Shown here: one piece after another, positions 26,520-47,013 of the stretch
How the letters are laid out: every line of letters starts with the position of its first letter
Position numbering within the stretch: the first letter of the stretch is position 1
Assembly (NCBI GenBank): GCA_904063045.1
Contig: CAJFCJ010000003.1
Span: 2,218,504 to 2,282,503, forward strand
Direction of reading: 5' to 3'
Origin: Dimorphilus gyrociliatus
Taxonomy: Eukaryota > Animalia > Annelida
Length of the DNA: 64,000 nucleotides
Translations under genes and position numbers: made by a program
The notes under the pieces: generated by a model
Databases searched by the model: none
What the model was told of the DNA's origin: nothing
The model's input: only the letters and a program-made list of their open reading frames with translations

Positions 26520-27625
<1,106 letters not shown>

Positions 27626-27880
27626 ACTAATTCCATTCAAAAAAATTTCTTTATCTTGTTCGTTCTTTCGAACTGAATTTAGCTAATACAATATTATAAA
27701 TCGTTAAGAATCTTATCGTCGAGATTAAAGAATTACAAAGAGATGCAGGCTGAATACCCTAATTAGTCTGTGGTAGTATATAGACCCAGCGGGTCAACTA
27801 ATCGATGTCAGTTGATGCTTTGACATTGTTGTGTGAGTTCCTTTCTTTGAGCCATTGACGCTTAGATTTATTCTGACAAG

Positions 27881-28585
27881 ATGACAAAGTCATTCCTATC
27901 TAGAATATATTATGAACGTAAAGTCCACAGAAGGACATTCTGCTTAGATCGTTTCAACATTAGTACAGACGAAGCAATAGATATGGAAGCTCATAGGGAT
28001 ACTCTTTGTGAAAAAATTTGGAAGGCCAGAACCTTTTCAATTATTGCTGAGGATGACAATACGAAGAAGATTAAAAAACAACTTCGGTTTATTAGACGTA
28101 AGCGTTTACATTTGCGCCGCCTTACAAATTCTATTAAGGAAGGAGAAGCTACTTCTGTGTGGTCGTCTGGAACTGAAGAATGCTTTGTTCAAGGAGGATT
28201 ACGCACTTTGGCTACTTTCGACAATAGCAATACACTTGAAGTTCGACTTCCTCCAGAAGGCTGTTCAGATTCCTCAGACAGCAGTTGTGAAAACTCTTTT
28301 CTCTCGACCTTTGATTGTGTTAATGAAGACCTTTATTCTTCGGATTCTTCTTCGGATTCCTCAGATTCTAGTTTAAACTTTTTTTGCGAAAATATTTATG
28401 AAGAACCAATCGAACCGTTCAAAATTCCCGAATTAGACATATTCTCTTCTTCAATTGAACCACCTACCCCTCCTAAACGCAAATCTTCAATCTTAAAAAA
28501 GAAAACAATGAAGAAACGTATATCCAAATTATTCAGTAGATTTCATTTAAAATCATGTAACAGTGTAGGATCGTCTAAAATGTAA
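27881..28585 (+). CDS. Intronless 234-aa protein of unknown function (basic helix, Ser/Asp-rich tract, basic tail)
   Basis: An uninterrupted 705-bp ATG ORF in AT-rich DNA, with higher GC than its flanks. No recognised domain. Confidence 0.7.
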   Translation: MTKSFLSRIYYERKVHRRTFCLDRFNISTDEAIDMEAHRDTLCEKIWKARTFSIIAEDDNTKKIKKQLRFIRRKRLHLRRLTNSIKEGEATSVWSSGTEECFVQGGLRTLATFDNSNTLEVRLPPEGCSDSSDSSCENSFLSTFDCVNEDLYSSDSSSDSSDSSLNFFCENIYEEPIEPFKIPELDIFSSSIEPPTPPKRKSSILKKKTMKKRISKLFSRFHLKSCNSVGSSKM

Positions 28586-28908
28586 ATTTTCAAAAAATAT
28601 GTATTCCCGCTGTATATATATATACAGTATATACCAGTTTACTGAGAAACTTGCTGTTTAATTTTGCAATCATAAGAGTCTTTGTAGACCTCATGTAAAT
28701 TTATAAAATAAAATAAAAAATATCTACTTGTCGAATATTATAGATTATCTAATCATAATATCTATCTTTTATAGAATTATAAAGCTTAGGCTAATGATTA
28801 CAAATACGATATAGATATTAGCTTGGATAGGCAATGTCAAAGGTTTTATAGCGATAATAGGAGCAATACATGCCTTGGTTTTTCTTCGAAATCATTCGAC
28901 AAATCGTT

Positions 28909-29507
28909 ATGTCATTTAAATTGTCTACAAAAGTAGCTTACTATCCTACTCTTCTATTTAATGTTTTAAGAGAGAAATTTGGGGTCACTAAATGGTATCA
29001 CGCTATTGATGATACTGTTATACTTGGAGCATTGCCGTTTAGAAATGTTGCGAAGAAGGTTTGTTTAATATCACTTTTAAGTCAAAATCACTCAAATTGT
29101 TTGTATTCTTTAAACAGTTAATTACTGAGTACAACATAAAAGGCGTTGTTTCAATGAACGAACTTTATGAGATGAAATTTTTTTGTCCTACGAAGAACGA
29201 ATGGTCGAATATGGGTGTTGAACAGATAAATCTACCAACAATCGACTATAGTGTACCTTCTTTAACTGATATAAGAAAAGGAGTTGATTTTATTAATCAT
29301 AAGAGAGATGAGAAAAGCACTGTCTATGTTCATTGCAAAGCTGGAAGAACCAGAAGCGCAACATTAGTAGCTGCTTATTTATGCAATAGGTATAACTATT
29401 CCCCAGAAGAAGCAGTAGAAGAAATAAGAAAAAAAAGAAGTCATATTTATGTTGCTAAAAGACATATTCTAGCATTGCATAAGTTTGTTGATTCTTCTCA
29501 TAATTAA
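28909..29507 (+). CDS. PTPMT1: Mitochondrial phosphatidylglycerophosphatase PTPMT1
   Basis: AYYPTLLFN, WYHAIDDTVILGALPF, catalytic VYVHCKAGRTRSAT. One intron. An alternative in-frame ATG lies at 28870. Confidence 0.95.
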
Positions 29508-29553
29508 TATATAAAGTTAATAGCATCGCTTTTCGATCTATGCACAAAATATA

Positions 29554-30095
29554 TTAAGATCTTGATTGCTTCTGTAAATAAGCAATCAATCCATACAAAA
29601 GAGGTCTGCAAAGAAAAATTGGATAATTATATCTTAAAATGTTGTTTTAATTGTTTAAATATGTGTCTTACATGTTGGCTGTTTCATCAATAATATTCAA
29701 TTCCTCACATAAAAGAGATCTTGGTAGTTGAGGTCCAGTTTGTCCACTTTCTAAGAGTTAATTCGACTTTATGCAAAGTTATAGATAATATTATAAAACT
29801 TTTTATTTACCAGTTTTTAATAAGGACGCTGTATTACGATAATTATTAAATTCCAGATATTCTATGATTAATTCATTAATAATAGCATTTTCTTTATTTG
29901 GCGGTTGTTTATCATCACTTTCATCTTGTAAACTTTTGAATATTTCTCCTCTTAGTTTCGTTTTTACTTCGTTTAATATACCCTTATTCTCCAAAATACC
30001 TCTAACAGCTAACGAATTTTCTCTTATTTAGAAAAGTTGATAAAAGAATATCATTACTTACCGGTTTTTAAGTCATCTATATTTGCTGTTTCCAT
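29554..30095 (-). CDS. CEP20: CEP20/FOPNL (LisH / FOP dimerisation domain), 120 aa
   Basis: Exons 30095-30062, 30008-29811, 29750-29672 and 29605-29554 encode LENKGILNEVKTKLRGEIF..ENAIINELIIEYLEFNNYRNTASLL..ESGQ..IPLLYGLIA. Confidence 0.9.
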
Positions 30096-30243
30096 TTTAT
30101 AATTATATAAATATTAAATTAATACTATTTTAATTAAATTTACAATGTAATTTCCTTGATATTTGTCAGTCGGACTAAAACTATCAGGTGCGCCTGTACA
30201 TGTTTTTCTTCGGAATGTCAAGGTCAAAGAATACTCTATAATT

Positions 30244-30255
30244 TTTGGCGCGAAA
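30244..30255. promoter_or_regulatory. Palindromic E2F site upstream of CEP20
   Basis: TTTGGCGCGAAA, about 150 bp from the ATG. Confidence 0.5.
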
Positions 30256-30414
30256 TTAAGTAAACGAAATCTTTCCGCTGATGTTTTCTTCTAATTTTTT
30301 TGCTATGAATGATAATAATCAAAGAAAAATTTTCTTATTTGAATAATAATAATTAAATAAAGTAAACAAACTGAAAAGTCATTTTGAACACTTATTCGCC
30401 ATAGTAAGATTCTG

Positions 30415-31060
30415 TTAAGCTCTTTGTTTTGGACACTCATTTAGAAAATAAAAATGCCAAAAAATATACGTCACAGATGCGAATAGTAATAGAGAGCCAA
30501 TTATTACGTAAGTATACCCATAGGAGCTTGACACATTCTTTATTTTACCCCCACAAGCTGAAGCAATCAAGAGACCAATACCACAAAAAACCCATTAATT
30601 CCTAAAGCATCACTTCTTTTGACACTAAATCAGACAAGCAATATTTCTTTAAGTAGAATTTCCCCCCATTGATTGTCATTAATAAAAACAGTAACGGTAA
30701 AAAGTTGTTTGTGTTATTGTAGGAATTAGCACTGGACCAACCCTGTTAATCATTGTCTATATGAAATAGGGTAGGCCTCTCAAACTCTTATGCTTTTTTT
30801 GGTATCAATAACAAAAACCAGACAAAAGTCTAGAGAAAATAACTATTAAGGAGCTGAAAGGCACCAAAAAGCTACTATTAAAATAAGAGAAGAACCAAAA
30901 ACAGTCTATTTATCACAGTAATTCGGAAAGGTTTTTCTTGCTAATGAACTTATTCAATTTACCTCCTATCAAGCCACTTGCAATATTGTCACAATACCTT
31001 ATATAATGACATCTGTGAACCACCGTTCAGCCCCTTATTCCCATTCTAATTATAGATGAT
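30415..31060 (-). pseudogene. Degenerate MFS (SLC16/MCT-like) transporter C-terminal fragment
   Basis: Peptide pieces in shifting frames: DNIASGLIGG, CLSDLVSKE, SDALGINGFF, CGIGLLIASACGGKIKNVSSSYGYTYVIIGSLLLFASVTYIFW*. Several frameshifts or stops cannot be repaired by GT-AG introns. Confidence 0.4.
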
Positions 31061-31583
31061 AATGATTTTTCAAGGCTAGCTGCTTATAAGTGTAATTTGC
31101 AGTTAGTAAAGTCTTTTGTTTTACCTATCTGGATTATTAGAGTCCTGTTCCATGCTATATAAAGATAGTTGCAAACGTTTTCCAAATACCATTAAACCTA
31201 TGAACTTAACTATTAAACAAAAGTTTTTAAAAATATAAGTATTAGATGTTTGTAAAAGTAGGTTTACCGAAATATCTATTCACGGCATTAAAAGACAAAA
31301 CTCTTAATTTATTATAATAAAATTTTTTCAGTTGCTAATTAATTAATTATGTAATGTAATTTATTGAATAATGAATGGAAGCTGTTTACGACTAATTTAG
31401 ATGTTGAATACTCTTTTTATGAAGTTAGTATTTAGCATGACAAAAGGATACCTAATATGTTTAAAATGGGGTTGTTATAATTAACTTACTTGCTATAGAA
31501 CTAATATTTAATTAGCTTAATATATTGGAAGTTTTTAATTAAAATTTTATTGGAATTTATGTAGTTTGATAGCACCAATCATA

Positions 31584-31595
31584 TTTCCCGCCAAA
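31584..31595 (+). promoter_or_regulatory. E2F site upstream of METTL18
   Basis: TTTCCCGCCAAA, 82 bp before the ATG. Confidence 0.45.
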
Positions 31596-31677
31596 CGACT
31601 TACTTATGGAATATAATAAAAACTGTTAAACGAGTTAACGAAAAAGCTACTTTCAACTTCCTGTTTTGTCGGAAAGC

Positions 31678-32705
31678 ATGTTTTCATTTAACTTTAACGT
31701 TGATAGTTCGGAAAATTGTGATAAAAAAGATGCATCAATTGATACTAATGAAGAGAAAGATACAAATGACAGTAAGCAATAATATTAATTCGTTATAGAG
31801 TAGTATTTATATATCAATTTCAGCTACTGAAGAAGTTATTTACGGAGAAGTAACGTTTAGTACCGCTGATTGCAATAATTTAATTGAATCATGTGGAATA
31901 GAAGAAACAATGATAACACCTGATTACAAAATATATCATATAGACTTGAATGTTTGTGAGGAAAAATTAAAGCAATCATCAGATAGTAAAATAAAAGAAG
32001 GTAAAACTAATGATATTTCAATATTTAGCGATTACATAAAGTATGTAATAACGTAATTTAGCTCTAGATAAAAATTCGGACGTTATTCCTCAAGTCTACG
32101 AAGGTGGATTAAAAGTATGGGAATGCAGCATCGATCTTTGTGCATATCTAAAAGAAACAAACTATGAATTGAGTAATTTAAATATTTTAGAACTAGGATG
32201 TGGAATAGGCTTACCAGGAATATATACCCTATCAAGACAACCTGCAAGTGTTACATTTTCAGACTATAATAAAGAAGTTTTAGAATTTGTGACTTGTCCT
32301 TCAGTATTTTTTAATTCAGAGGATGAGGATCGACCAGAAGTTTCTTTTATATATGGGGATTGGTCTGTAATTGATAGGCAATTACGACACAGATTTTATG
32401 ATCTTATTCTCATGTCAGAGACTATTTATGATACCACCAATTATAAAATTCTCCTTAAACTTTTGGATTTAGTATTATCAGATAAAGGAGAGGTTCTTTT
32501 AGCGTCTAAAAATCATTATTTTGGTGTTGGAGGTGGAACAAGACTGTTTGAAAAAGCAGTTGAAAATCATGGTATCTTCAAACATTTCCTGTTAAAATCA
32601 TATCCTGAAGGTAAATTATAAATTTTCAAAAAGAACTCATAGAAATATCATTATTAACTTATTTCAGGACTTCAGAGAGAAATACTTAAGTTAGCTAGGC
32701 GTTAA
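31678..32705 (+). CDS. METTL18: Histidine methyltransferase METTL18/HPM1
   Basis: MFSFNF start, DVIPQVYEGGLKVWECSIDL, ILELGCGIGLPG SAM motif, DYNKEVL, YDLILMSETIY, ASKNHYFGVGGG, GLQREIL. Four exons. Confidence 0.93.
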
Positions 32706-33213
32706 TCAACAACTAGTATTTTCATCAAGGTCGTTTATCTTTCTTATAAGAACAAATTAGTCCGCTTAAGGAGAACAATTACATAAATAAATCAGTTTGT
32801 AAATTTTGAATAATCAAAAATTTCCTTATTGATTCATTACTCTCATAACTATATAGTAAACATTATGTAATTGTTACAGAAGAATAGTATCAATGGGAAA
32901 TTAGAATGAAAAATGAGATATTTATAGTTGATAGCGTGTAGCTGTCGATATAGATTTGTAATTAATTTCTCCAAATTCCTTAAATTCAGATCTGTTTTTA
33001 GAATCATTAGTAAACCCGTAAAAGTTGCTATTACCGCTTAAAGATCACCTATAAGAACATCTATAAATACCACGTAATCGGATACATGAATATTTACAAA
33101 CACCATAGCATTGCCTCAAGAAATAGAATATGCCACAACATATATTTCGTTAGTGATGTTTATTTTTGTCAGGTAGTTTTAACTTTGTTTACATTATTCG
33201 AAAGTCTTTTCAG

Positions 33214-34164
33214 TCACGATCCGTTTAAGAATTTTCTTAAGTTTTCTTTGGTAAACCCAGATGATTTGAATGACGATAGTAAAGTCTTGACGTAGTCTTT
33301 TAATTGATTCCCTCCAAAGTCGGGCTGTTTAGAAAAAAATTAAAATGTTTGTAATATATAATAATGTTTGTAATATATTAAAATTATCATCTACGTAGTG
33401 TAAATGCTTTGATAAATCACGAATGAAGGCTAAAAACTCTTCATTATCCAGAGATTGATTTCTATCCTGTAAATTATCTTCAAAATTAAGTATATTAGTC
33501 TTATTTTACATCAAAACTGTTTACCTTATCGTAGTGATTAAAAATGCTATTTATTTCGCTATCGCTCAATTTATCGTTTAATTCCATCTTGAAATTGGTA
33601 AGGAAATTTCTTTCAGTATTAAACATTGTATAAAAAGCCTGTAGATTTAAACTTTTTGTCTCTAACTTTGTATATATTTTCAATGTTTTCACTTGAAATT
33701 GTAAACTCTGTCCATAACTGTTTGCATGATCACAATATTCTGCATAATCATTAAGGAATCTCTCTAAATTTTCACCACATAAGCTACCTTCGTCTTGTGT
33801 ATATTCCAACCAAATTTTCATAATATCAACACTGTGTATAGGCTCATCAGTATCACATGACATCAGTGGCGAAGTTTCTTGATCACTATATAATCCTTGA
33901 TTCTCGTCATGTTTATCAACTTGAATAGGATTTTTCCTAAAAGAAACGTGTTAATTTATATCTACGATTTTTAGACTAATCTACTAAGTTAAATATAAAC
34001 TTTGAATTCTCAGCTGGTGTTTCAAGTAGATGATTTATTGTAACATCTTTCTCAAATTGTGTATAAGGATGATCAAATTCTGAATTTCCCCTTCTTTTCA
34101 CATCTTTTAAATAGTATAGTTTAGTAGCAGTTCTCCTCTTTCCATCGCTCCCTTTATCACACAT
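33214..34164 (-). CDS. Secretagogin/calbindin-like EF-hand protein retaining only the C-terminal half
   Basis: Four in-phase exons. SVDIMKIWLEY..LERFLND, ERNFLTNFKME and IFNHYDKDRNQSLDNEEFLAFIRDL resemble hexa-EF-hand EF3-EF5. One canonical Ca2+ loop. Confidence 0.7.
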
Positions 34165-34255
34165 ATTTAAAAATCTTCACACAATCCTTAAGGCGTAACG
34201 TTATATTTCTGCTCTCCAAACTAATAACAATATTACTTGTTTATATTGAATAAAT

Positions 34256-34844
34256 ATGTTAAAATATCAAATTATATTATTATTTATTAATAAGATAATT
34301 AGTTCATATCGTAAGTAGCAATTTTAGAATACTGTATATTAAACAAAGTCAATTATCCATTACTAATTTCCTCATATAAGGGGAGACGGATATTTCTATG
34401 AAGCTTTTAACTTGTTATAGTTGCCGTGATGTATTTGATATTCGTTCAAAAGTTTTCTTTAGAGATTGTCCTTATCATTTTAAAGATAGAAAAAATTCAT
34501 TAAATCTTACAACTTGTGTTGGACGTTACTGCGTTTCAGCTACGCGTTTGTATAATAGGTTGGGAGGTGACGCTCGAAAATACTTAAAGAAAAATTTCTC
34601 TGACAATATTCAAACTAATGGTCTTATTTATTTTCAAAAGTTTTGTTCTTTTATTAAATTAGTTGAGCCTATAGAACAGGACCATTTAATTGATGAAAAT
34701 TGTGTTATCTACACAAGTTCTGGAGAAGGTTTGGTAGAAATATGTTATTGTAATAGTGAATCTTTTTGTAATTCATCAATTTATTTAAAATCGTCTGAAA
34801 AATTTATGTCTTTAATAATCTTTGCACTTTTTAAAATAATGTAA
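34256..34844 (+). CDS. Ly6/uPAR three-finger (Sleepless/Quiver-like) protein, probably GPI-anchored
   Basis: Signal exon 34256-34310 (MLKYQIILLFINKIISSY), 70-bp phase-1 intron, 10 Cys from CYSC to CYCNSESFCN, hydrophobic C-terminus FMSLIIFALFKIM. Confidence 0.75.
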
Positions 34845-34939
34845 AAATAATGTCATTATTCTTTTAAAATTATTTAAAATAAAAACATTCAAAACCTTGG
34901 ATATCGTACTTTCAATGGAATGTATTTCATTTGCATAAA

Positions 34940-36694
34940 ATGGCTGACTTGGCGGGATTGAATATGGAAGGGGCACAGAAAAGCTTTGTTGGTTGTCTTT
35001 CAACTGTTTTAGAATTAACAAAAATTTCTGAACAAAAATGCATTCGTATATCTCGTCAGTCAAAAATAGTGCTATTGAGGCACTTTCTGAAATCGATCGG
35101 CAAGAAAAAAGCTAATATAGTTGTTGATCAGTTCCTTCGTAAGAGTAATTAGCTACTCTTTAAAATCCACAATAATAATATTTTTTGTCTTAAAGGTTCT
35201 CAGAAATTAGGAAAGAAGGTAATTACACATATAATCATTTTCTCTTTTTAAGCATCGTTTCAGTATCCTAAGAAACTGAGGAAAACCAGTTATTTGGATG
35301 TGGATCAACTTATATCAATCATATCGGAAAATGTTAAAGATTTCCCTTCTGCTCATAAACTATTGGAAGTGTTAGATGATAAACTAAGCCATAATATACA
35401 AGTATAGACGTACTTAGTTGAAGCTAAAAGATACTAATCAATAATTTTTATATGAAAGCTGAATTTGAAAAACTTTCGTAATTCGAAACTCAGGAAGTAT
35501 AGAGAAAAAGAAAATCCATTCTATGGTCTATCTCTATCAGAATGGACAAAAAAAATAAATGAAATTTGTAATGATCCTGGTAAATTATATGTACGGTTTA
35601 TAGAAATATCTGGAGTTTAAATTTCTGAAAAAAAATGAATGATACAAAAGTCGAATTTACAGGTTGAAAATGACATTGATAAGGAGACCCCACCAATGAC
35701 TAATTTTAAATTTATTAATGAATATGTCCCTGGCTCAAACGTGGAAATAACGAATAAAGCCATAATAGGGTAAGTGAAAAACTCTTTCACATATTTTGTG
35801 AAAAATATAAATGGAAAACTTACTAGATGTTCCTGTAAAACCTGTGATTCGAAATCTGGATGTTGCCCCACGCAGGCTGGTACTGATTTTATGTATGATA
35901 AAAATGGGCATGTTAAATATCAACCTGGACGGCCAATTTATGAATGCAATAGCCTTTGTCCATGTAGTAGAAAGTGTAGAAATAGAGTAGTTCAAAGAGG
36001 TAGAAGTATACCTTTAATTATATCTCGTACCAAAAATAAAGGTTGGGGAATCAAAACGAAGCAAGCTATATCCCCTGGATCTTTTGTTTGTGAATATATA
36101 GGAGAAGTAAGAAAGTAAATGGGAATAAAAAACTATTTTGTCATGATTGCTTTCAAATAATTAGGTTATAACTACGGAGGAAGCTGAAAAAAGGGAAGAA
36201 TTATACAAAGTTGAGAGAAACACTTATTTATTTGAATTAGACTTTGCCGACGATGAAAATAAACCGAAGTATGTTATTGACGCAGCTTTTAAAGGAAATG
36301 TTAGCCATTTTTTAAATCATTCGGTAAACCCATATAAAATTATTTTTTCCTTGAAATTTTAAATAATTGGTCAACTATTTTCAACTGACAGTGTTCTCCT
36401 AATCTCGGTGTCTATCCAGTTTATATTGAAAACTTAGACATTCATATGCCAAGATTGGCTTTTTTCGCTATTCGAGAAATTTCATCGGGCGAAGAATTAA
36501 CTTTTGATTATCAAAATATGGCGATTAGAAAACAAAAAGAAGCAATTAAAGTAGAAAATGCTATCGATCTCAATTTGCCTGATGTTGAACAAATGCTTGC
36601 TGAATCAGCATCAACATCTCCCATAAAAAGTCGTTTGGGTTCTATTAGATGTCTTTGTGGTGAATCAAACTGCCGAAAATATATCTTTAAGTAA
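34940..36694 (+). CDS. SUV39H: SUV39H/Su(var)3-9 H3K9 methyltransferase (pre-SET, SET, post-SET)
   Basis: EWTKKINE..VENDIDKETPPMTNFKFINEY, pre-SET CSCKTC..CC..YECNSLCPCSRKCRNRVVQRG, GWGIKT..FVCEYIGEV, YLFELD, GNVSHFLNHS|CSPNL, EELTFDY, post-SET CLCGESNCRKYIF. Confidence 0.93.
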
Positions 36695-37341
36695 ATAAAG
36701 ACAATATTTTTTTCAATTTTATACGAATTCTTCTATGTCAGTTTTGTTACAATTTTTACTCTTTTAAAAACAATACAATAATTTTTACTTATCAAAAAAA
36801 TGTAATTGACATCTAATTTCATTGTAAATCAAGACTTGGTAATATAAATATCTATAGCTCGAATTTTTTTAAATAATTTGCTGTTTATCAGCAAAAGAAG
36901 TATATTTATCTTGATAGTCAGCTGTCTTATTTTGCTTTGTATGTATTTGAACATATAAACAATATTTTAAGATAATCACGATAGGCTGTTTATAATCAAG
37001 GACTGACGCTAAATAACTCCCCTATATGATTAACAGGAGTATAATTGATAGCGATGTTTATTTGATCTAATTATTCTGCAGAATAACTGCTAAATCACTC
37101 TATTATATCAACTATTAAGTTGCCCGCCAAGAGCTCTAGCAGACGACAGAATGAATGTAGGGTCCGCCATTTACAAACTGCGCTTTAAACTAGCACGTTA
37201 CCTATTATAAACAATGAATTATTTCAATTTAAAAAATTTTTTTAAATAAATCTTTTTATCTGTTCCGTTTTATAATATAGTTTATATTTTGGCAAGAGAC
37301 TAGCAGACGACGTTTTGAAAGTTCTCCCATTTACTTTAAAT

Positions 37342-39879
37342 ATGGACAGTCGCAGCTTAAACTCTCCAATAAATGAGAGTGATGAGCGCGAATCTTTGAT
37401 AAGGAATAGGGGAGAACGATCCTCAGACTCCATAGGATCAACAGATCATCCAAGACGAAGATCCGTTGTTGAATGGGTACGAAACGCAGTTAATTTTAGA
37501 AGAAGAAATAATTACTCAAGCTTCTATGAGAGAATAGATGGAGATAATGTTTCCAGCTTTTCAAGCAACTCAACAGATGATCAGGAACACACCCATGAGA
37601 TTGAAACTAAATATGAGAGTTTAGACTACGATCCTTGCGAAAACAACTTATATATTGCTGAAGAATGTGAAACTGGTTACAGAGACTATCTTTTTAAAAA
37701 TTTTGCCCGATGGATCGTTATGTTTTTCATTGGGGTTATAACTGCTCTTATAGCTTGTTTTATAGATTTCACTATATCTTTATTAGCTGGATTAAAATAT
37801 CGAACAATTAAGGCGTTGGCGGATTCTTGTGTGATTGACGTTTGTATGGGTCAACCTTTAATTGTATGGATAGCTCTAAATATTGCTTTTGTTAGCATCT
37901 CAGCATTTTTAGTAGCGGTAGTTGAACCTGTTGCAGCAGGTTCCGGTATTCCTCAGATTAAGTGTTACTTAAATGGTGTACTAATTCCTAAAGTTGTTAG
38001 GTTAAAGACTCTATTTTGCAAAGTAATAGGTGTAACATTATCTGTCGTTGGTGGTTTAGCCATAGGCAAAGAAGGACCTATGATTCATTCCGGTTCTGTT
38101 GTGGCGGCTGGAATTTCACAAGGGCGTTCCAGTACTTTCGGAAAGGATTGCCATTTTTTTAAATTTTTTAGAACAGATCATGAAAAACGAGATTTCGTTA
38201 GGTATGTAAAATTACTTAATTACTATAAAATTATTCAGCTATCATATTTACTTCAGTGGTGGTGCTGCTGCTGGTGTCGCAGCCGCTTTTGGTAAGATTC
38301 AGAATCTAATATCCTACTAATATTTGTAATATCTATTATCTCTATTTAAGGTGCTCCAATTGGAGGTGTCCTGTTCAGTTTAGAAGAAGGAGCCAGTTTT
38401 TGGAATCAAAGTCTTACTTGGCGTATATTTTTTGCTTCAATGGTTTCGACATTCACTTTAAATATTGTTCAGAGTTTTATAAAAGGTCACCCATTTTTTT
38501 TATCATATTCTGGATTAATCAATTTCGGTACGTTTGGTGACGATGTTCAGTTTCACATGCAGGAATTATTAATTTATATACCCATGGCAATTTTTGGCGG
38601 ACTAAGTGGAGCCTTATTTAATAAGATTAACCATGATTTAACTGTATTTCGAGCAAAATATTTAAAAAAATGGTACTTGAAAATGCTTGAAGCTATGATT
38701 GTTGCTGCTACAACATCCTTAGTGTCGTTTGTATTAATCTATTCTACTCAGGATTGTCAGGCTTTAGGCAAGGATCATACAGATGTCCCTCTACAAATGT
38801 ATTGCGGAGATGGTGAATATAACTCAGTAGCTGCTCTCTGGTTAAGAACGCCGGAAGAATCAGTTAAGAGCTTCTTTCACGATCCTCCAGGTTCATTCAG
38901 AATTCCAACTGTACTCTGTTTTACCATAGTATATTTCTTCCTTGCAACTTGGACTTATGGACTATCGGTCCCAAGTGGATTATTTATTCCATCTCTCTTG
39001 ACTGGTGCTGCTTGGGGTAGATTGGTGGCGATATTACTAAATATGGCATTCCCAAACTCCACTTCCTTCGATGCCGGTAAACTATCTTTAGTGGGAGCTG
39101 CTGCACAACTAGGAGGAATTGTTCGAATGACAATTAGCTTAACAGTAATTTTAATGGAGGCAACGGGTAATATTTCTTTCGGTCTACCTTTAATGATAAC
39201 TTTAATGATAGCGAAATGGGTTGGCGATTTATTCAATGAAGGTCTATACGATATCCATATCGAATTGGCTAAAGTTCCCATACTTAGTTGGGAAGCACCT
39301 GCCTTTACTTCCGATAGATCAGCTGAATCTGTTATGTCTAAGGATGTTCAGTGCATAAATAAAATTGAAAAGGTGTCTTCAGTTCTTGGACTATTATATG
39401 ATGAACCTCACAGTGGTTTTCCTGTTGTAGACAAAGACGGAACTCTGAGGGGTTTCGTTCTTAGATCGCAGCTTCTTGTTCTTTTAAAACATAAAATGTT
39501 CTATCAAGAAGAAACTGATAGATCAAATTTGCCAGAACTTAGGCAACATCATTTTCGACAACTAAGTCCTCATTGGAAAAACCAGAAGGATTATCTTCGA
39601 AAAATTGTAATTAGCGAAGAAGAAAAAAGCTTTCTACTGGATTTGACTCCTTTTATGAATCCTTCGCCATACGCTGTGTCTCTATCTGCATCTTATCCAA
39701 GAATGTTTAAACTATTTAGAGGGTTGGGTTTAAGGCATTTAGTAGTTGTTGATACAAAGAATAAGGTTGTTGGTATTGTCACAAGAAAAGATTTGGCGAG
39801 ATATAAATTTATCACTAAAGGATTCCAAGGACGTGTTCACCAATTAGCTTTTTCAACGACAACAGAAGAGCAAGCTTGA
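37342..39879 (+). CDS. CLCN7: Lysosomal Cl-/H+ exchanger ClC-7, 807 aa
   Basis: Exons 37342-38201, 38257-38291 and 38351-39879. ERESLI dileucine motif, YESLDYD, GSGIP, GKEGP gating Glu, SLEEG proton Glu, GLFIP, two CBS domains (FRGLGLRHL). Confidence 0.96.
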
Positions 39880-40176
39880 CGATAATTAAACTCTTTATTA
39901 TATTTTAAAATTGTTTTTCTTCGAAACGAAACAACAAAGTAGATGTTTAGGGAGAAAAAGAAAGCTTATTCTTATATTTTTTTTAACTTATAACTTATTC
40001 TTTTACCTTGTTTTTTAGCCCGAATTCTCATTGTCTGATATTTCTAATACAGAGTCAAACATTCGTAATGAAAACATGTAAACATCTTCTTCTTATCATT
40101 TTAACATTGTTCAATAATAGTCTAATTTAAAAGTACATCTACACTTATGAATTATTAAAATTCAAACTTGAACTGA

Positions 40177-40194
40177 AGGTGGCGCTTTTCGCGG
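40177..40194 (+). promoter_or_regulatory. CTCF-like core plus E2F-like site upstream of MAN2C1
   Basis: AGGTGGCGC (40177-40185) followed by TTTCGCGG (40187-40194). Confidence 0.3.
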
Positions 40195-40327
40195 ACTCTT
40201 TGTCGTCTTTGGAACTGAATTCTACACCTACCGGTATTTTATCGCTCGTTATCAGTTTTTGTAATATTTATCAGCTGACGAGAGATGCGTAACTCCATTT
40301 AGAAGATATTAACCATTTATCATAAAC

Positions 40328-43300
40328 ATGTCTATGCCAAGATACACTTTAAAACACAAAAGAACTACCTTGGAAAGGGCTGAAAAATTTATATCCGAAG
40401 TGTATTTTACAGATGTAAATCTTCATGGAAAGTAAGAATTTGATGAATATTACATAATTTCAAGAAATATTTTTTTAATTTATGAAATATTCCATAGATT
40501 GCGAAAATTTGAAAGAAATATTGAATTAATTGAGCATTATAAGGCTCCTGGAAGAATAACATTCCAACAAGCTATATCGAATAAATTTAATGCAACAAAA
40601 CTGCACGAAAGATTTGGACCAACGTAAGAAAATATTTATATTTGTTTGGAAAATATCCATAAAATAATGGATATGGTTTTAATATTATTCTTCCAGATGG
40701 AGTACGCACTGGTTTAGAATAACCTTAGAAATTCCAAAAGAACTTCAGAGTGAGGATGTCCAATTGGAATGGGATAGCGAGTCGGAAGCAATGATATGGT
40801 CAGAAGATGGGAGAGCATTACAAGGATTCACTGGTGAGAATAGGCGAAATCTATTCTTGTTACCTAAGAAAAGGTAGGTCAAGTAAGATAAAATGTAGTT
40901 CATTCTAAAAATCTTCTATAAATTTCTTAGCGGAAAGCAAATATGGTTTATTGAGATGGCTTGCAATGGTTTATTTGGGGCTGGTAATAATTCACAGATA
41001 AATCCACCAAATGAAAATAAGTATTTCGAATTGAAGAAATGTGGATTGGTCGTTTTGAATGAATTAGTTCACCAATTATGTATTGATTATCAAATTCTTA
41101 TTGATATTGTAAAAGTCAGTTGACTATAATTTTCTTGATAAATATTCATTTATAAACAAATTTTATATTTAGCAATTAGGTAAATCAACTAGATCTTACC
41201 AAGCTCTCTTTACTTTGAATAAAATGACAAACATAATTGAAGTTGGTAACGATAGATCATATGAAGAGTACATCTTGGATTAAATTTGACTATTAAACTA
41301 ATTGTTTTTGTATAAAACAGAGCTCGATCGATAGCGAAATCTTTCTATGAGGAGCATAATGGTCAGAATATTCATATGATACATGCTGTAGGAAATTGCC
41401 ATATAGACTCAGCTTGGCTTTGGCCCTACGAAGAAACGATCAGAAAATGTGCAAGGAGCTGGTCTTCGACAATTCGTTTGATGGAAAAATATCCTGATTT
41501 TACATTCGCTTGCTCTCAAGGCCAACAGGTTAGGGAATATTTTCAATAATTACTACTACAACTTACTAAATGATTATTAAATTCTGTCTAGTTTGAATGG
41601 GTTAAAGATAATTATCCTGATATATATGAAGAGATGAAAAAGTATATATCTGAGGGTAGATTTATACCTATTGGAGGAACTTGGTGTGAATTGGATGGTA
41701 ATATACCGAGTGGAGAATCATATATAAGGCAGTTCTTAATAGGTCAAAGATTTTTTAGGAAAGAGTTTAATATTACTTGCCAAGAGGTTTGTCATTTATT
41801 AATTAAATATTGGTATAATGTAAAAATAACATATTTTGCCTATAGTTTTGGTTACCCGATACTTTTGGTTATTCTGGCCAGCTACCTCAACTTATTAAAT
41901 TGGGAGGTATGACTAGATTTGTAACTCAAAAGATGAGTTGGAATATCTTTAACAAATTTCCAGTTAGTTGTTTAATATTTAAGTATATCTGTAGTTAATT
42001 GAATTGTTTGATATTTATTTGAACTAAAGCACAACACTTTTTATTGGATTGGTATCGACAACTCAAAAGTAATTTGTCACTTCCCACCAGGTGATTCCTA
42101 TACAATGGAAGGCAAAATATCAGAGGTAGTTCTTAGATCTTCAGCCCATAAACTAAATACAAAATGCTTTATTTAAAAAGTTGATAGCCACGGAAAATAA
42201 TCATAAAGATAAAGGTAGAAGTGATAGAAGTATGTATCTCTACGGATATGGAGACGGGGGTCAGGGTCCGACGTTAGTAATACAAATAAATAATAAAAAC
42301 AATTACATATGCTATCTTTGGTAGGGGTGAAATGATTGAAGTCTTAAATAGAGTGAAAGATGTTGTCGGTTTACCAAAGTAACTATTAAATGAACCAGCT
42401 ATTTGAACATTTCTTAAACATTATCATGTTTGCAGGGTAAAATATTCATCACCTACGGAATTTTTTGATGAAGTTGAATCATTTGAATCTAAAAACCTAT
42501 GTGAATGGACTGGGGAGTTGTATTTAGAAATGCACAATGGCACATATACAACGCAAGCTAAGGTGAAATAGTTTTCAATTGATAAGACAAATGATAATGT
42601 ATCTCTTTTATAGACAAAACTAGATAATAGAAAGTGTGAATTTCTTTTGAGAGATGTTGAGTTTCTATCATCTTTAGCTTGGTTGAATAAGTCTTACCAA
42701 TACCCTCATGAGGAACTCACAAGAATATGGAAGCTCTTATTACTAAATCAATTTCATGATGTTTTACCCGGTTCTTCTATTCGAATTGTTTATGAAGATG
42801 CAGCAAAATATTACAAAGATATTAAACGTTCAGGGAAAAAGCTCAAGGACTCATCTTTGGCGGCGTTTTCAAACGAAAAAGTAATTTTATAATTAAATAT
42901 TTTGGATACATATTTATTTACATACTATTCGATAAAGGATAACAAAGGCAGTGTTTTAATTAATACTTTTGGCTGGGCTCGAAAAGAAGTTGTCAGTTGG
43001 TCTGATGAAACTATTGAAAAAGCTGATTTAGAACAGGAAAAAATTCAATATGATGTTGGAGAAAGCTTAGGTATTTTTTATAAAGTAATTTTTTGCTTAA
43101 ATAACCGTGTTTTTTTCAGTTCTTGTTGATATCCCTGCTTTCACTTTTAATCCTCTATCAAAGTTGGATGTCATTCAACCAAACGAATCCAACGAAGTAA
43201 CTGTAACTAAAGATGTAAGAAATAATTTCAACTTTTTCAAATGGCTGATAATCAATATATATTCTATTTTGAAACAGGAGGATGGTAATTTTGTCATGAG

Positions 43301-44447
43301 GAATAGTTTATTAACAGCTGTAATTGATTGTGTAGGTCGAGTAATATCATTAAAACTTGCTGGTTCTGAAAGAGAAGCCATTTCTCAAAGTGATCCTGCC
43401 AATCAGTTCTTGATTTTTGATGATATACCGTTATATTGGGATGCATGGGATGTTATGGATTATCATTTGGAAACGCGAAAAACTCTTGAATCTGCCATAG
43501 AATATGCTAGAATTACAGAAAGTGGTCCAATTAGAGCTAGCTTAGTTTTTGCATTAAAAATAAGTGATTCTTCATACATTCAGCAAACCATTAAACTTGA
43601 CGCTCTCTCACCAATGCTGAAATTTGATACGATTGTACATTGGCATGAGAATAGAAAGTTCTTGAAAGTTGAATTTCCTTTGCGGGTTCATACCACTTGC
43701 GCAACTTACGAAACTCAATACGGTTTCTTAAATAGACCAAACCATCAAAATACTTCTTGGGATTCAGCCAAATTTGAAGTGTGTGGTCATAAATGGGCTG
43801 ATCTTTCTGAACACGGATTCGGTGTTTCAGTCTTAAACGATTGTAAATACGGATGGTCGACATTTGGTAATATAATGCGATTATCATTGTTTGTATTTGC
43901 TATCAAATTAAATAACAAAAGTTTAAACATTAAATAATTCCTTAAAGGCTACGATCTCCTAAAGCGCCGGATGAAACAGCAGATATGGGTATTCATCATT
44001 TTACATATGGATTAATGCCTCATAGTGGTACTTTCCAACAAGCAAATGTCATTCAACAAAGTTATAACTTGAATTGTCCTCTTGTTGAAGTGCCAACAAA
44101 GCAGGATGTTTCTGGTAAATTTGATATTGAAATATCAGAAAATGCAATCATACTGGAAAGTATTAAAAAAGCAGAGGATCACGATGCTATTGTATTCCGC
44201 TTCTATGAAAGTCACGGAAGTCACGTAACCACTAGAGTGAAATTACCCAAGATTATTAAGGATGCTAAACAGTTAGTTTTGTTTACTTTAAATAATATTT
44301 TATGGAAATAATTAATTATTAATTTACAAAAACAGCTGCAATGCTATCGAAGATATTTTTGAAGATGAATGTCTAAACTTTGACAAAGAGAATTTGGTTA
44401 TTGAATTTACACCTTTTCAAATAAGATCAGTAATGATCATATTTTAA
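40328..44447 (+). CDS. MAN2C1: Cytosolic alpha-mannosidase 2C1 (GH38), 18 exons
   Basis: [117 protein letters not shown]. Confidence 0.97.
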
Positions 44448-44574
44448 ATGAAAATTGACAATATAAGTAATGTTTCTTCAAGTTTCCTGTATTTCTTGAA
44501 ATTTGACAAAATAAGTAAAATGATTATCACATTATATTTTGTTATGAATTCAAAAAATGTTCAAATTCTTCAAT

Positions 44575-47013
44575 TTATAATTCTTCAGTCTGAGAAACAA
44601 GCCATTTATATAAGTCATTTCTGGATTGTTTAAGCATTAACCCTCCTACAACTTCTCTACACTTTTTATGATAGGAATTTACATAATCAACCTGAAAGAA
44701 AAGCAGTTAAACCAACGTAATTATTATGAATAATTATTATTTACCTCTTCTGGAGTAAGCATTTCTTTGATTATCATTTTCTTTTGGATAGGGACCAAAG
44801 TGATTGGTTCAAATGTAAGATAACCTCTATTTCCAAAGTTGTTTTTAGTGTCTGCTTTGACGACAATTTGAAGATTTTCAATACGAATACCAAACTTTCC
44901 ATCTTCGTAGTATCCTGGTTCATTACTTAATACCATGTTTTCTTGAAGAGCCACCTCGGACGCTAATAATTTATAGCTTATCCTGCAAGGACCTTCGTGA
45001 ACATTTAGAAAGCATCCGACACCATGACCAGTCCCATGTTGGTAATCCAGTCCTCCCTCCCAAAGGTACAACCTAGCTAAGGAGTCCAGTCGACTACCCA
45101 TAACACCATTGGGAAAGACGACTTTAGTTAATGCAATGTGACCTTTCAAGACACGAGTAAAGCAATCCCTTTCAAATTCAGTTGGAGTTCCAAAGTGAAT
45201 TGTTCGCGTAACTATGGGAAAAGGAGATTGAAACACAACATATTTAAAATGTATATTTTTCAGAAGCCTTTCAATAATAGCTAAACTAACCATCTGTTGT
45301 TCCATCCTTAAATTGAGCTCCAGAGTCACAAAGATACAATTCATCTTTCGTGATTGGTCTGTTAGTTTCGGGTGTTACCTTATAGTGAATAATTGAACCA
45401 TTGGATCCGGAAGAAGATATAGTTTCGAAGCTAGGACCGACAAACTCATCTTGTTCAGCTCTGAAATTTTCTAATATTTTCGAGCCATGTAGTTCATCTA
45501 CTTTGATATTATTAGATAGCTGTTGTTCAAGCCACATAAAGTATTGACATAGAGCCACGCTATCCTTGATATGAGCTCTTCTCATGCCTTCCGCTTCAGT
45601 TTCATTTTTGTTGGCTTTCATCAAGTTTATAGGGGTTAGGCTGTTAAATAGACGATCTTCTGGTACAGCACTTGAAATAGCGTAGTTTGTCGAATCACTT
45701 AACTATATATATAAATACATGTATAAACAAAGATAGATTAAATGCCAATTTAAAAAGGAGAGTTACACAAAATCAATACAAACCCATATTTTTCCTTCAA
45801 CCTCTTTTTCAATAAGTTGAAGTAAATCAGCTTTTATTTGCCCATACGGTTTAATCTCAACTCCTTTTAAGTGTTCTCTAACACTATTCGTCACCTTAGC
45901 CGGGTCAATGAATAGACTGTAGGAAACTATTTTTTCATAGATTATCAAGAAAATTCTAACACTTACTAAACATTTTTCACTGTTATGATGACGTATGAAA
46001 AAAATACTGGATTAAAGACAATATCCGATCCTCTTAAATTTAAAAGATAAGCTATCTCATCTAATGCAGAAAGAACCAAGATTGTTGCTCCTTCTGCTTC
46101 CATTTTGGTTCTACATTCTGCAACCTTATCTTGCCAATTTTTTCCAGCAAATTTCATATCAAGAATAGAAATTGGATTACAAGGAACAGGAGGCTGATCA
46201 GTCCAAACCTTGTCAATTAAGTTTTCTTCAACAGCAACAAGTTGCCGGTTAGCTTTATTTAGGTCATGGAATGATTTGGTCCATCCAGAGTTTGAATAAA
46301 GCCAAGGATCAACTCCAATCCGACTGTCCTTTGGCAGAACTTTTTTTAACCAAGTAGTTAAGGAGGGTGTATCAGGCAATCCATCTTTCATCAAAGTCCA
46401 ATTGTCGTCCAACTGTTGATTTGCTTGTAAATAATATCTTCCATCTGTCCATAAAGCTGCCTCCTTTTGCGTAATAACCGCCAATCCAGCACTTCCAGTA
46501 AATCCACTAATCCAAGCTCTTCTAGCATCTCTTTCGGCAATATATTCACTCTACAAAGACACAACATTTATCGAAAGAAATAAGATAATATTCGTCAAAA
46601 TCTATTTTTTGCAACTTTAAATTGGTTAACAATACAATTCGTAGGTTTAGTCTTTAGCCACTTGTGACAGTTACATTTGATTTTTGATAAAAAAAATATG
46701 GCATGATTTTGTATCGTATAGGAGCGCAGATAAAATATAACTATGATAGTGTTTTGGATATAATTTGTGTAAAAAACAAACATTTAATTGATTATCTCAT
46801 ATAATACTGTTCAATAAATTCGTTTTGCTTTTTTTTTCAAACCAGTTTCAATCTTATTCAAAAACCTCGTAGTGTAGTAATTCATTTGAATATTCAATTC
46901 ATTACCATATGAGCATCCTCCGATGGGACAATATAAGCTTGTAAACTAAATTTGGAAGATTTCATAAGCTCTCTAAGTTGTCGAAGGATTGTTGTTGTAC
47001 TTTTTCGAGACAT
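44575..47013 (-). CDS. XPNPEP1: Cytosolic Xaa-Pro aminopeptidase P
   Basis: MSRKSTTTILRQLRELM..AYIVPSEDAH, WTDGRYYLQA, LCDSGAQFKDGTTD|VTRT, HGTGHGVG, HEGP, EPGYYEDGKFGIRIE. No signal peptide or GPI tail. Six exons. Confidence 0.95.

What the first reader, a model, noticed from the sequence alone, without database searches (positions are those of the whole stretch)
34940..35600. SUV39H ortholog with no recognisable chromodomain
Seen: the N-terminus (VGCLSTVLEL) and everything from EWTKKIN onward are SUV39H-like. The roughly 150 residues between them lack the chromodomain signature (Y/F-E-V-E..YLVKWxG..TWEP) and contain no Trp. The short introns hide no such exon, and the upstream gene ends 95 bp before the ATG. 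Established: the SUV39H/Clr4 chromodomain aromatic cage reads H3K9me and drives read-write heterochromatin spreading. Inference: a writer uncoupled from spreading, which could suit a gene-dense, repeat-poor genome, or a specialised paralog.
Basis: partly seen in the sequence, partly recalled or inferred. Interest (0 to 1): 0.7.

Follow-up and report, generated by a model that had tools for sequence, protein, structure and literature searches.

The report
SUV39-type histone methyltransferase without chromodomain
This compact annelid genome carries an intact, conserved gene for a SUV39-type enzyme that writes the histone H3 lysine-9 silencing mark but has no chromodomain to read that mark, and a published gene census lists this enzyme class as absent from the species.

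Summary
An 8-exon, 446-codon gene lies at 34940-36694 (+). Exons 5-8 encode a complete Pre-SET/SET/post-SET module. Its best solved-structure match is human SUV39H2 for each of exons 6, 7 and 8 searched alone, well above EHMT1/2. Exons 1-4 (about 165 residues) give no Pfam hit and contain no Trp before the SUV39 'W-x3-LN' motif.

A chromodomain profile built from 52 SUV39 relatives scores at most 8.2 bits in all six frames of the 64-kb window and of a 20-kb syntenic locus from a related species. Real chromodomains score 22.5-87.5 bits. The relative has the same seven introns, the same chromodomain-less front end (35-53% identical, dN/dS about 0.26) and a strongly constrained catalytic part (dN/dS about 0.07). 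AlphaFold2 predicts exons 1 and 3 as all-helical.

Chromodomain-less SUV39 enzymes are known (Hydra, coral, DIM-5, SET-25), so this is a new member of a known kind.

If the genome is Dimorphilus gyrociliatus, as earlier scan notes say, the gene contradicts a 2025 census that lists SUV39H1/2 as absent. No RNA evidence could be obtained, and the joined protein was not searched.

The parts
34940..36694 (+). Whole SUV39-type gene: 8 exons, 1341 nt of coding sequence, 446 codons plus stop
   Evidence: Exons joined only inside a local script give one open frame with a single terminal stop. All introns are GT-AG. Intron positions and phases are the same in the related locus L001.
34845..34939 (+). 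95-bp spacer between the upstream gene's stop and the ATG, with an in-frame TAA at 34880-34882 and no AG
   Evidence: Read-through cannot extend the protein N-terminally, and no splice acceptor lies between the stop and the ATG.
34940..35138 (+). Exon 1 (66 codons + 1 nt): basic, helical N-terminal region, no chromodomain
   Evidence: No Pfam hit and no PDB sequence hit. AF2 predicts helices 23-31, 39-53 and 55-65 and no strands, mean pLDDT 73. It is 53% identical to L001 exon 1, dN/dS 0.14.
35196..35218 (+). Exon 2: 23-nt micro-exon, frame kept but sequence not conserved; probably a linker
   Evidence: The L001 counterpart is 26 nt and also keeps the frame (read).
35264..35401 (+). Exon 3 (46 codons): helical, lineage-specific
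   Evidence: No Pfam hit. AF2 predicts helices 13-23 and 28-44, pLDDT 68. Same length in L001, 35% identical.
35459..35590 (+). Exon 4 (44 codons), ending in the SUV39 'W-x3-LN' motif (EWTKKIN, 35540-35560); donor GTACGG
   Evidence: 16.3 bits against a profile of the 44 residues upstream of VENxxD in 98 SUV39 relatives; 0 of 1000 shuffles reach it. L001 has a GTAAGT donor at the same codon.
35663..35977 (+). Pre-SET region (exon 5 and the first half of exon 6) with all nine cysteines, first at 35828 and last at 35975-35977
   Evidence: Pfam Pre-SET E 5.5e-10 on exon 6. Aligned to SUV39H2. Cysteines counted from the sequence.
36041..36511 (+). SET domain (exons 6-8) with GWGIKT, YLFELD, NHSC (split by intron 7) and ELTFDY intact
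   Evidence: Pfam SET on exons 7 and 8. SUV39H2 is the best PDB match for each exon. Motif coordinates.
36518..36649 (+). Insertion of about 44 residues between SET and post-SET, conserved in L001
   Evidence: Exon 8 alignment with L001 is 74% identical overall. An insertion at this place is typical of SUV39H and Clr4, not EHMT (own knowledge; the SUV39H2 alignment covers both flanks).
36650..36694 (+). Post-SET CLCGESNC followed by RKYIFK and the stop
   Evidence: Aligned to the C-terminus of SUV39H2; coordinates.

Best explanation
This is the SUV39-type (KMT1A/B-like) histone H3K9 methyltransferase gene of a dinophilid annelid. An ancestor shared with at least one other species lost the chromodomain, while the complete catalytic module stayed under strong constraint. 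In place of the chromodomain there is a basic, all-helical N-terminal region of about 165 residues under weaker but real constraint. Shown: the gene structure, the SUV39-type catalytic module, the absence of any chromodomain-like sequence, and conservation in a second species. Inferred: the enzyme still methylates H3K9, and it is brought to chromatin by its helical N-terminus through partner proteins (an HP1-, MPP8- or MBT-type reader) or nucleic acid. Any read-write feedback would then run in trans rather than within one polypeptide.
For: Gene model and frame. Pfam Pre-SET and SET. SUV39H2 is the best solved-structure match for each catalytic exon (87.3, 41.0, 56.5 bits) against EHMT1/2 (72.5, 24.1, 27.8 bits). 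Among the nearest cluster representatives whose names were looked up, those carrying a family name are called SUV39H or Su(var)3-9 (lamprey, cricket, horseshoe crab, amphioxus, hagfish, barnacle). No Pfam hit in exons 1, 3, 4. A chromodomain profile run unfiltered over six frames of the whole window and of L001 gives at most 8.2 bits (E 0.28), against 22.5-87.5 bits for 94 positives. The same scan finds chromodomains in genomic contigs of the next-nearest relatives (66.5 and 56.9 bits). Exons 1 and 3 are predicted all-helical. Syntenic ortholog L001 has identical intron positions and the same chromodomain-less N-terminus; N-terminal dN/dS is about 0.26 and catalytic about 0.07. A precedent for trans-coupling is SET-25 with LIN-61 (PMC7778263).
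Against: There is no RNA evidence. Pfam, structure prediction and database searches were run exon by exon, not on the joined protein, so a fold spanning exon boundaries was not tested. Enzyme activity, partners and the trans-coupling mechanism are inferred only. The rest of the genome was not searched for a second SUV39H. Species identity comes from earlier scan notes plus annelid best hits, not from a direct check.
Confidence: 0.75

Rival explanations
1. The gene model is incomplete: a chromodomain is supplied by a distant or alternative 5' exon outside what was examined.
For: No RNA evidence was obtained. The spacer to the upstream gene is only 95 bp, so the promoter position is unclear.
Against: There is no chromodomain-like sequence in any frame within 35 kb upstream or 27 kb downstream in the window, nor in the 20-kb L001 locus. 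An in-frame stop lies upstream of the ATG with no AG acceptor between them. The MA(D/E) start is conserved in L001. The species' median intron is 66 bp and no spliced leaders were found (PMC7854359).
Confidence: 0.06
2. It is a specialised paralog, and a canonical chromodomain-bearing SUV39H exists elsewhere in the genome.
For: Only one 64-kb window was examined here. Vertebrates carry two SUV39H genes (own knowledge), and P0045 looks like a SUV39H2-type form lacking most of the chromodomain.
Against: The published census assigns no KMT1A/B ortholog to D. gyrociliatus (PMC12153100). The catalytic part is under strong constraint, and the gene keeps its position in a syntenic block of about a dozen genes in the relative, as expected of the ancestral copy.
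Confidence: 0.08
3. The helical N-terminus is itself a cryptic methyl-lysine or chromatin reader of another fold, so read-write coupling in cis is retained by a replacement module.
For: The region is conserved between two species whose synonymous sites are saturated. It is basic, 19% Lys+Arg. It has no detectable relative, so its function is open.
Against: It has no aromatic-rich signature and no Trp in residues 1-148. Only helices are predicted. The common methyl-lysine readers (chromo, Tudor, MBT, PWWP) are beta-rich folds (own knowledge).
Confidence: 0.08
4. It is not a SUV39 ortholog but a truncated EHMT/G9a-class or other SET paralog.
For: The census reports two EHMT-class genes and no SUV39H in this species (PMC12153100). 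One of those two could in principle be this gene.
Against: SUV39H2, and even fission-yeast Clr4, score above EHMT1/2 for exons 6, 7 and 8. The SUV39-specific W-x3-LN motif, the adjacent CC in Pre-SET, the SET/post-SET insertion and the C-x-C-G-x3-C-R-K-Y-I-F end are all present. There are no ankyrin repeats. An earlier scan note places both G9a/GLP-type genes on other pieces of the genome (not checked here).
Confidence: 0.03

Closest known systems
SUV39H1/2, Su(var)3-9, Clr4 (KMT1A/B)
   Same: Pre-SET with nine Cys; SET with GWG, NHSC and ELTFDY; an insertion before post-SET; a C-x-C-x4-C post-SET with an RKYIF end; and the W-x3-LN...VENxID motif upstream of Pre-SET. It is the best labelled match for every catalytic exon searched.
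   Different: No chromodomain. The N-terminal 165 residues are a helical region with no detectable relative outside the lineage.
Chromodomain-less SUV39 homologs of cnidarians (Hydra: PMC1435931; Acropora SUV39H1-like, P0109)
   Same: A SUV39-type catalytic module with a long N-terminus that lacks a chromodomain.
   Different: The loss here is in a bilaterian (annelid) lineage, so it is independent. The N-terminal sequences are unrelated. Krauss et al. 2006 described the chromo domain as obligatory in bilaterian Su(var)3-9.
C. elegans SET-25 and Neurospora DIM-5
   Same: H3K9 methyltransferases with no chromodomain. SET-25 is linked to existing H3K9me by a separate reader, LIN-61, and by NRDE-3 (PMC7778263). 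This is the likely working analogy.
   Different: SET-25 is described as SUV39/G9a-like, and neither enzyme is a close ortholog of this gene. Their partners were shown by experiment; here no partner is known.
Tapeworm SUV39-like protein (Mesocestoides corti, P0136)
   Same: A bilaterian SUV39-like protein with Pre-SET and SET and no Pfam Chromo hit.
   Different: Only 67 residues lie upstream of its Pre-SET hit, its gene model is unverified, and it has no similarity to the N-terminus here.

Membership tests
SUV39 clade of SET methyltransferases (KMT1A/B type) | Pre-SET zinc cluster with nine cysteines | tested here: met
   Pfam Pre-SET E 5.5e-10 on exon 6. Nine Cys lie between residues 201 and 250.
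SUV39 clade of SET methyltransferases (KMT1A/B type) | SET domain with cofactor and catalytic motifs (GWG, NHSC, ELxFDY) | tested here: met
   Pfam SET on exons 7 and 8. Motifs were read in the alignments to SUV39H2.
SUV39 clade of SET methyltransferases (KMT1A/B type) | Post-SET C-x-C-x4-C | tested here: met
   CLCGESNC at residues 433-440, aligned to the SUV39H2 C-terminus.
SUV39 clade of SET methyltransferases (KMT1A/B type) | Closer to SUV39H/Clr4 than to EHMT, SETMAR or other SET families | tested here: met
   Labelled PDB scores favour SUV39H2 for exons 6, 7 and 8. Nearest representatives that carry a family name are SUV39H or Su(var)3-9. No tree including EHMT or SETDB1 was built.
Canonical Su(var)3-9/SUV39H/Clr4 architecture (chromo + SET) | N-terminal chromodomain with an aromatic cage | tested here: not met
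   No Pfam Chromo hit. At most 8.2 bits in six frames against 22.5-87.5 bits for positives. No Trp in residues 1-148. Exons 1 and 3 are predicted helical. The joined protein was not tested.
Canonical Su(var)3-9/SUV39H/Clr4 architecture (chromo + SET) | H3K9 di/trimethylation activity | not testable with these tools
   Inferred from intact motifs and a catalytic dN/dS of about 0.07.
EHMT/G9a-GLP (KMT1C/D) | Ankyrin repeats upstream of Pre-SET, and post-SET directly after SET | tested here: not met
   No Ank hit in any exon. About 44 residues are inserted before post-SET. EHMT scores are lower in every exon.

The most novel reading that the evidence does not exclude
The conserved, basic, all-helical 165-residue N-terminus is a new targeting module. 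It replaced the chromodomain in dinophilid annelids and docks the writer onto a separate H3K9me reader (an HP1, or the MPP8-like double-chromodomain protein noted elsewhere in this genome) or onto nucleic acid. That would give a trans-coupled read-write system in an animal with negligible DNA methylation and very few transposons.
Probability: 0.3. Interest if true: 0.6.

Novelty: new member of a known kind. Interest (0 to 1): 0.45.

Why it matters
The SUV39 chromodomain is the textbook element that lets the H3K9 writer bind its own product and spread heterochromatin. It was described as obligatory in bilaterian Su(var)3-9 proteins (PMC1435931). Here a bilaterian lineage keeps the enzyme under strong constraint without it.

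It also bears on a published conclusion. The 2025 annelid chromatin census states that D. gyrociliatus lacks KMT1A/B and links this to its loss of DNA methylation (PMC12153100). If the window is from that species, the enzyme is present and that argument needs revisiting.

Tried and rejected
- **Reads:** Only one run, of unknown kind, holds the stretch.
- **Annotated protein:** exact look-ups of two single-exon ORFs of the window found nothing. The big protein search returned no 100% match. No reference for the full-length protein exists, so every search and fold was done exon by exon.
- **N-terminal similarity:** My own profiles gave only weak scores.
- **Exon 3:** it shows no similarity to SUV39 linkers.
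- **'Beta-sheet deleted, last chromodomain helix kept':** this idea rests on visual likeness only and is not supported statistically.
- **SAP/helix-extended-helix idea for exon 1:** no Pfam hit, no Foldseek match and no Atlas hit.
- **Chromo-like string at 34878-34958:** 'YFICIKWLTWRD' lies in another frame across the ATG, scores 8.2 bits at E 0.28, and is absent from L001. I treat it as chance.
- **Census supplement:** the gene tables are truncated in the held copy, so I could not see which gene ids were called EHMT.

Full report
**Gene model**

The + strand between 34940 and 36694 carries eight exons:
- E1 34940-35138
- E2 35196-35218
- E3 35264-35401
- E4 35459-35590
- E5 35663-35769
- E6 35827-36106
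- E7 36165-36323
- E8 36392-36694

They are separated by seven GT-AG introns of 45-72 nt. Joined inside a local script only, to check frame and length, they give 1341 nt: 446 codons and one terminal stop.

The preceding + strand ORF ends at 34844, 95 bp before the ATG. That spacer holds an in-frame TAA (34880-34882) and no AG, so the protein cannot be extended upstream by read-through or by an acceptor in the spacer.

It is correct in substance.
- 'VGCLSTVLEL' is residues 17-26 and 'EWTKKIN' is residues 148-154, so 121 residues lie between them, not about 150.
- Residues 1-148 contain no Trp.
- Pfam finds nothing in exons 1, 3 and 4 even at E<=10. It finds Pre-SET (E 5.5e-10) and SET in exons 5-8.
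- PDB sequence searches with exons 1 and 4 find nothing relevant.

**Is a chromodomain hidden anywhere?**

I built a profile from 52 full chromodomains of the nearest SUV39 relatives. I ran it without filters over every stop-free stretch in all six frames of the 64-kb window and of a 20-kb orthologous locus.
- The best score is 8.2 bits (E 0.28). The 94 positive-control hits among the relatives score 22.5-87.5 bits, median 64.
- That best hit is a short string in another frame across the ATG. It is absent from the relative, and I treat it as chance.
- The same scan picks up chromodomains at 66.5 and 56.9 bits in raw genomic contigs of the two next-nearest relatives for which genomic contigs with upstream sequence were fetched (L007, L009). 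The method therefore works on unspliced DNA.
- A simple motif scan of the window found no TWEP-type signature either.
- AlphaFold2 on exon 1 (66 aa, two-sequence alignment) gives three helices and no strand, with pLDDT 80-88 over residues 21-66. Exon 3 gives two helices.
- Foldseek and the protein Atlas give no match for exon 1.

**What kind of SET enzyme is it?**

Each catalytic exon, searched alone against solved structures, is best matched by human SUV39H2.

| Exon | SUV39H2 (bits) | Clr4 (bits) | EHMT1/2 (bits) |
|---|---|---|---|
| E6 | 87.3 | 81.4 | 72.5 |
| E7 | 41.0 | 33.1 | 24.1 |
| E8 | 56.5 | 29.1 | 27.8 |

- The exhaustive protein search with exon 6 returned 150 representatives. 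Among the nearest ones whose names I looked up, those carrying a family name are called SUV39H or Su(var)3-9: lamprey, cricket, horseshoe crab, amphioxus, hagfish, barnacle and damselfly.
- The nine Pre-SET cysteines, GWGIKT, YLFELD, NHSC, ELTFDY and the post-SET CLCGESNC are all intact.
- The end of exon 4 matches the SUV39-specific W-x3-LN motif that precedes VENxID. It scores 16.3 bits, and 0 of 1000 shuffles reach that.
- There are no ankyrin repeats.

So this is a SUV39-type enzyme, not an EHMT-type one. No tree including EHMT or SETDB1 could be built, because no such sequences were on hand.

**A second species**

The best hit of the big search (P0001, 76% identical) is an exon-sized ORF on Logan contigs. 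Its 31.8-kb contig, of which 20.3 kb is held as L001, is syntenic with the window over about a dozen genes.

| Region | Amino-acid identity to L001 | dN/dS |
|---|---|---|
| Exons 1, 3, 4 | 53%, 35%, 51% | about 0.26 |
| Exons 5-8 | 73-82% | about 0.07 |

- The L001 ortholog has introns at the same seven positions and phases. This includes a consensus GTAAGT donor where the window has the weaker GTACGG.
- It has the same chromodomain-less front end.
- Synonymous sites are saturated (pS about 0.7), so the dN/dS values in the table are rough.
- The front end is therefore coding and constrained, and the chromodomain was already missing in the common ancestor of the two species.

The likeness of the extreme N-terminus to the pre-chromodomain segment of other SUV39H proteins falls in the same register in both species. 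It is weak: hhalign E 0.42, and 3.0 and 7.3 bits on my own profile, reached by 6-8 of 500 shuffles. Whether the chromodomain was cut out of an otherwise retained N-terminus, or the whole front end was replaced, stays open.

**Organism and literature**

- Earlier follow-up notes of this scan name the genome as Dimorphilus gyrociliatus. I did not verify this directly.
- It fits that the best named matches of the neighbouring CLC-7 gene are annelids.
- It also fits the 30% G+C, the roughly 55-nt introns and the high gene density, given the species' published median intron of 66 bp (PMC7854359).
- The 2025 annelid chromatin census states that only Capitella has a KMT1A/B (SUV39H1/2) ortholog. It says D. 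gyrociliatus lacks it and carries two EHMT-class genes (PMC12153100). No other held paper mentions both the species and SUV39.
- An earlier scan note places both G9a/GLP-type genes on other pieces of the genome (unchecked). If so, the gene described here was probably missed rather than filed as EHMT. The census gene tables are truncated in the held copy.

**Precedents**

- Krauss et al. 2006 found no chromo domain in the Hydra and Dictyostelium homologs or in DIM-5, and called it obligatory in bilaterians (PMC1435931).
- Among the nearest representatives, coral (Acropora) and tapeworm (Mesocestoides) SUV39-like proteins also lack a Pfam Chromo hit.
- C. elegans SET-25 has no chromodomain. It is tied to existing H3K9me by the MBT protein LIN-61 and by NRDE-3 (PMC7778263).

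The kind is known. This is a new, independently arisen member in an annelid.

**How it most likely works**

- Shown: an intact, constrained SUV39-type catalytic module joined to a constrained, basic (19% Lys+Arg), helical N-terminus without a reader fold.
- Inferred: it methylates H3K9. Targeting and any feedback on existing marks run through partner proteins or nucleic acid bound by the N-terminus, as for SET-25 and DIM-5.

**Limits**

- No transcript evidence was obtained.
- The spliced protein has no reference. Pfam, PDB, Atlas, AlphaFold and the big search were therefore run exon by exon, and the joined step was left out.
- Two local scripts read the whole window file, including those places. 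One was the motif scan (which printed one context line from there). The other was the six-frame profile scan.

Noticed in passing
window 34878-34958 (+), frame +2 relative to the ATG: The best chromodomain-profile score in the window falls here: 'GMYFICIKWLTWRD*', 8.2 bits, E 0.28. It overlaps the start codon of the SUV39 gene in another frame. It has no counterpart in L001 and is probably chance, though its position is curious.
   Followed up: partly
window 36518-36649 (+): The insertion between SET and post-SET (about 44 residues, Lys-rich first half) is well conserved in L001. It lies where Clr4 has its automethylated autoregulatory loop (papers listed) and could play the same role.
   Followed up: no
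window 34398-34844 (+); L001 8398-8843: The upstream neighbour is a small Cys-rich protein with a '...CYCNSESFCN' motif and a hydrophobic tail, so it looks Ly6/uPAR-like. It is conserved in the relative and ends only 95 bp (131 bp in L001) before the SUV39 start codon.
   Followed up: no
window about 27000-46500 versus L001 1-20312: Gene order is kept between the two species although synonymous sites are saturated: DSPc phosphatase, MFS transporter, Methyltransf_16, EF-hand, Ly6-like, SUV39, CLC-7, alpha-mannosidase, M24 peptidase.
   Followed up: partly
protein P0160: The best named HMMER hit of the window's CLC-7 exon is an NCBI record flagged 'UNVERIFIED_CONTAM' in the sturgeon Acipenser sinensis assembly (E 2.7e-187). 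It scores above all annelid hits, which suggests a contaminating small invertebrate in that assembly.
   Followed up: no
window 35580 versus 35591: Exon 4 uses a weak GTACGG donor although a consensus-like GTAAAT lies 11 nt upstream and out of frame. L001 has only the downstream site, as GTAAGT. Use of the upstream site in the window would truncate the protein.
   Followed up: partly
They lie between the SUV39 gene and the CLC-7 gene and were left out of all later database searches.
   Followed up: no
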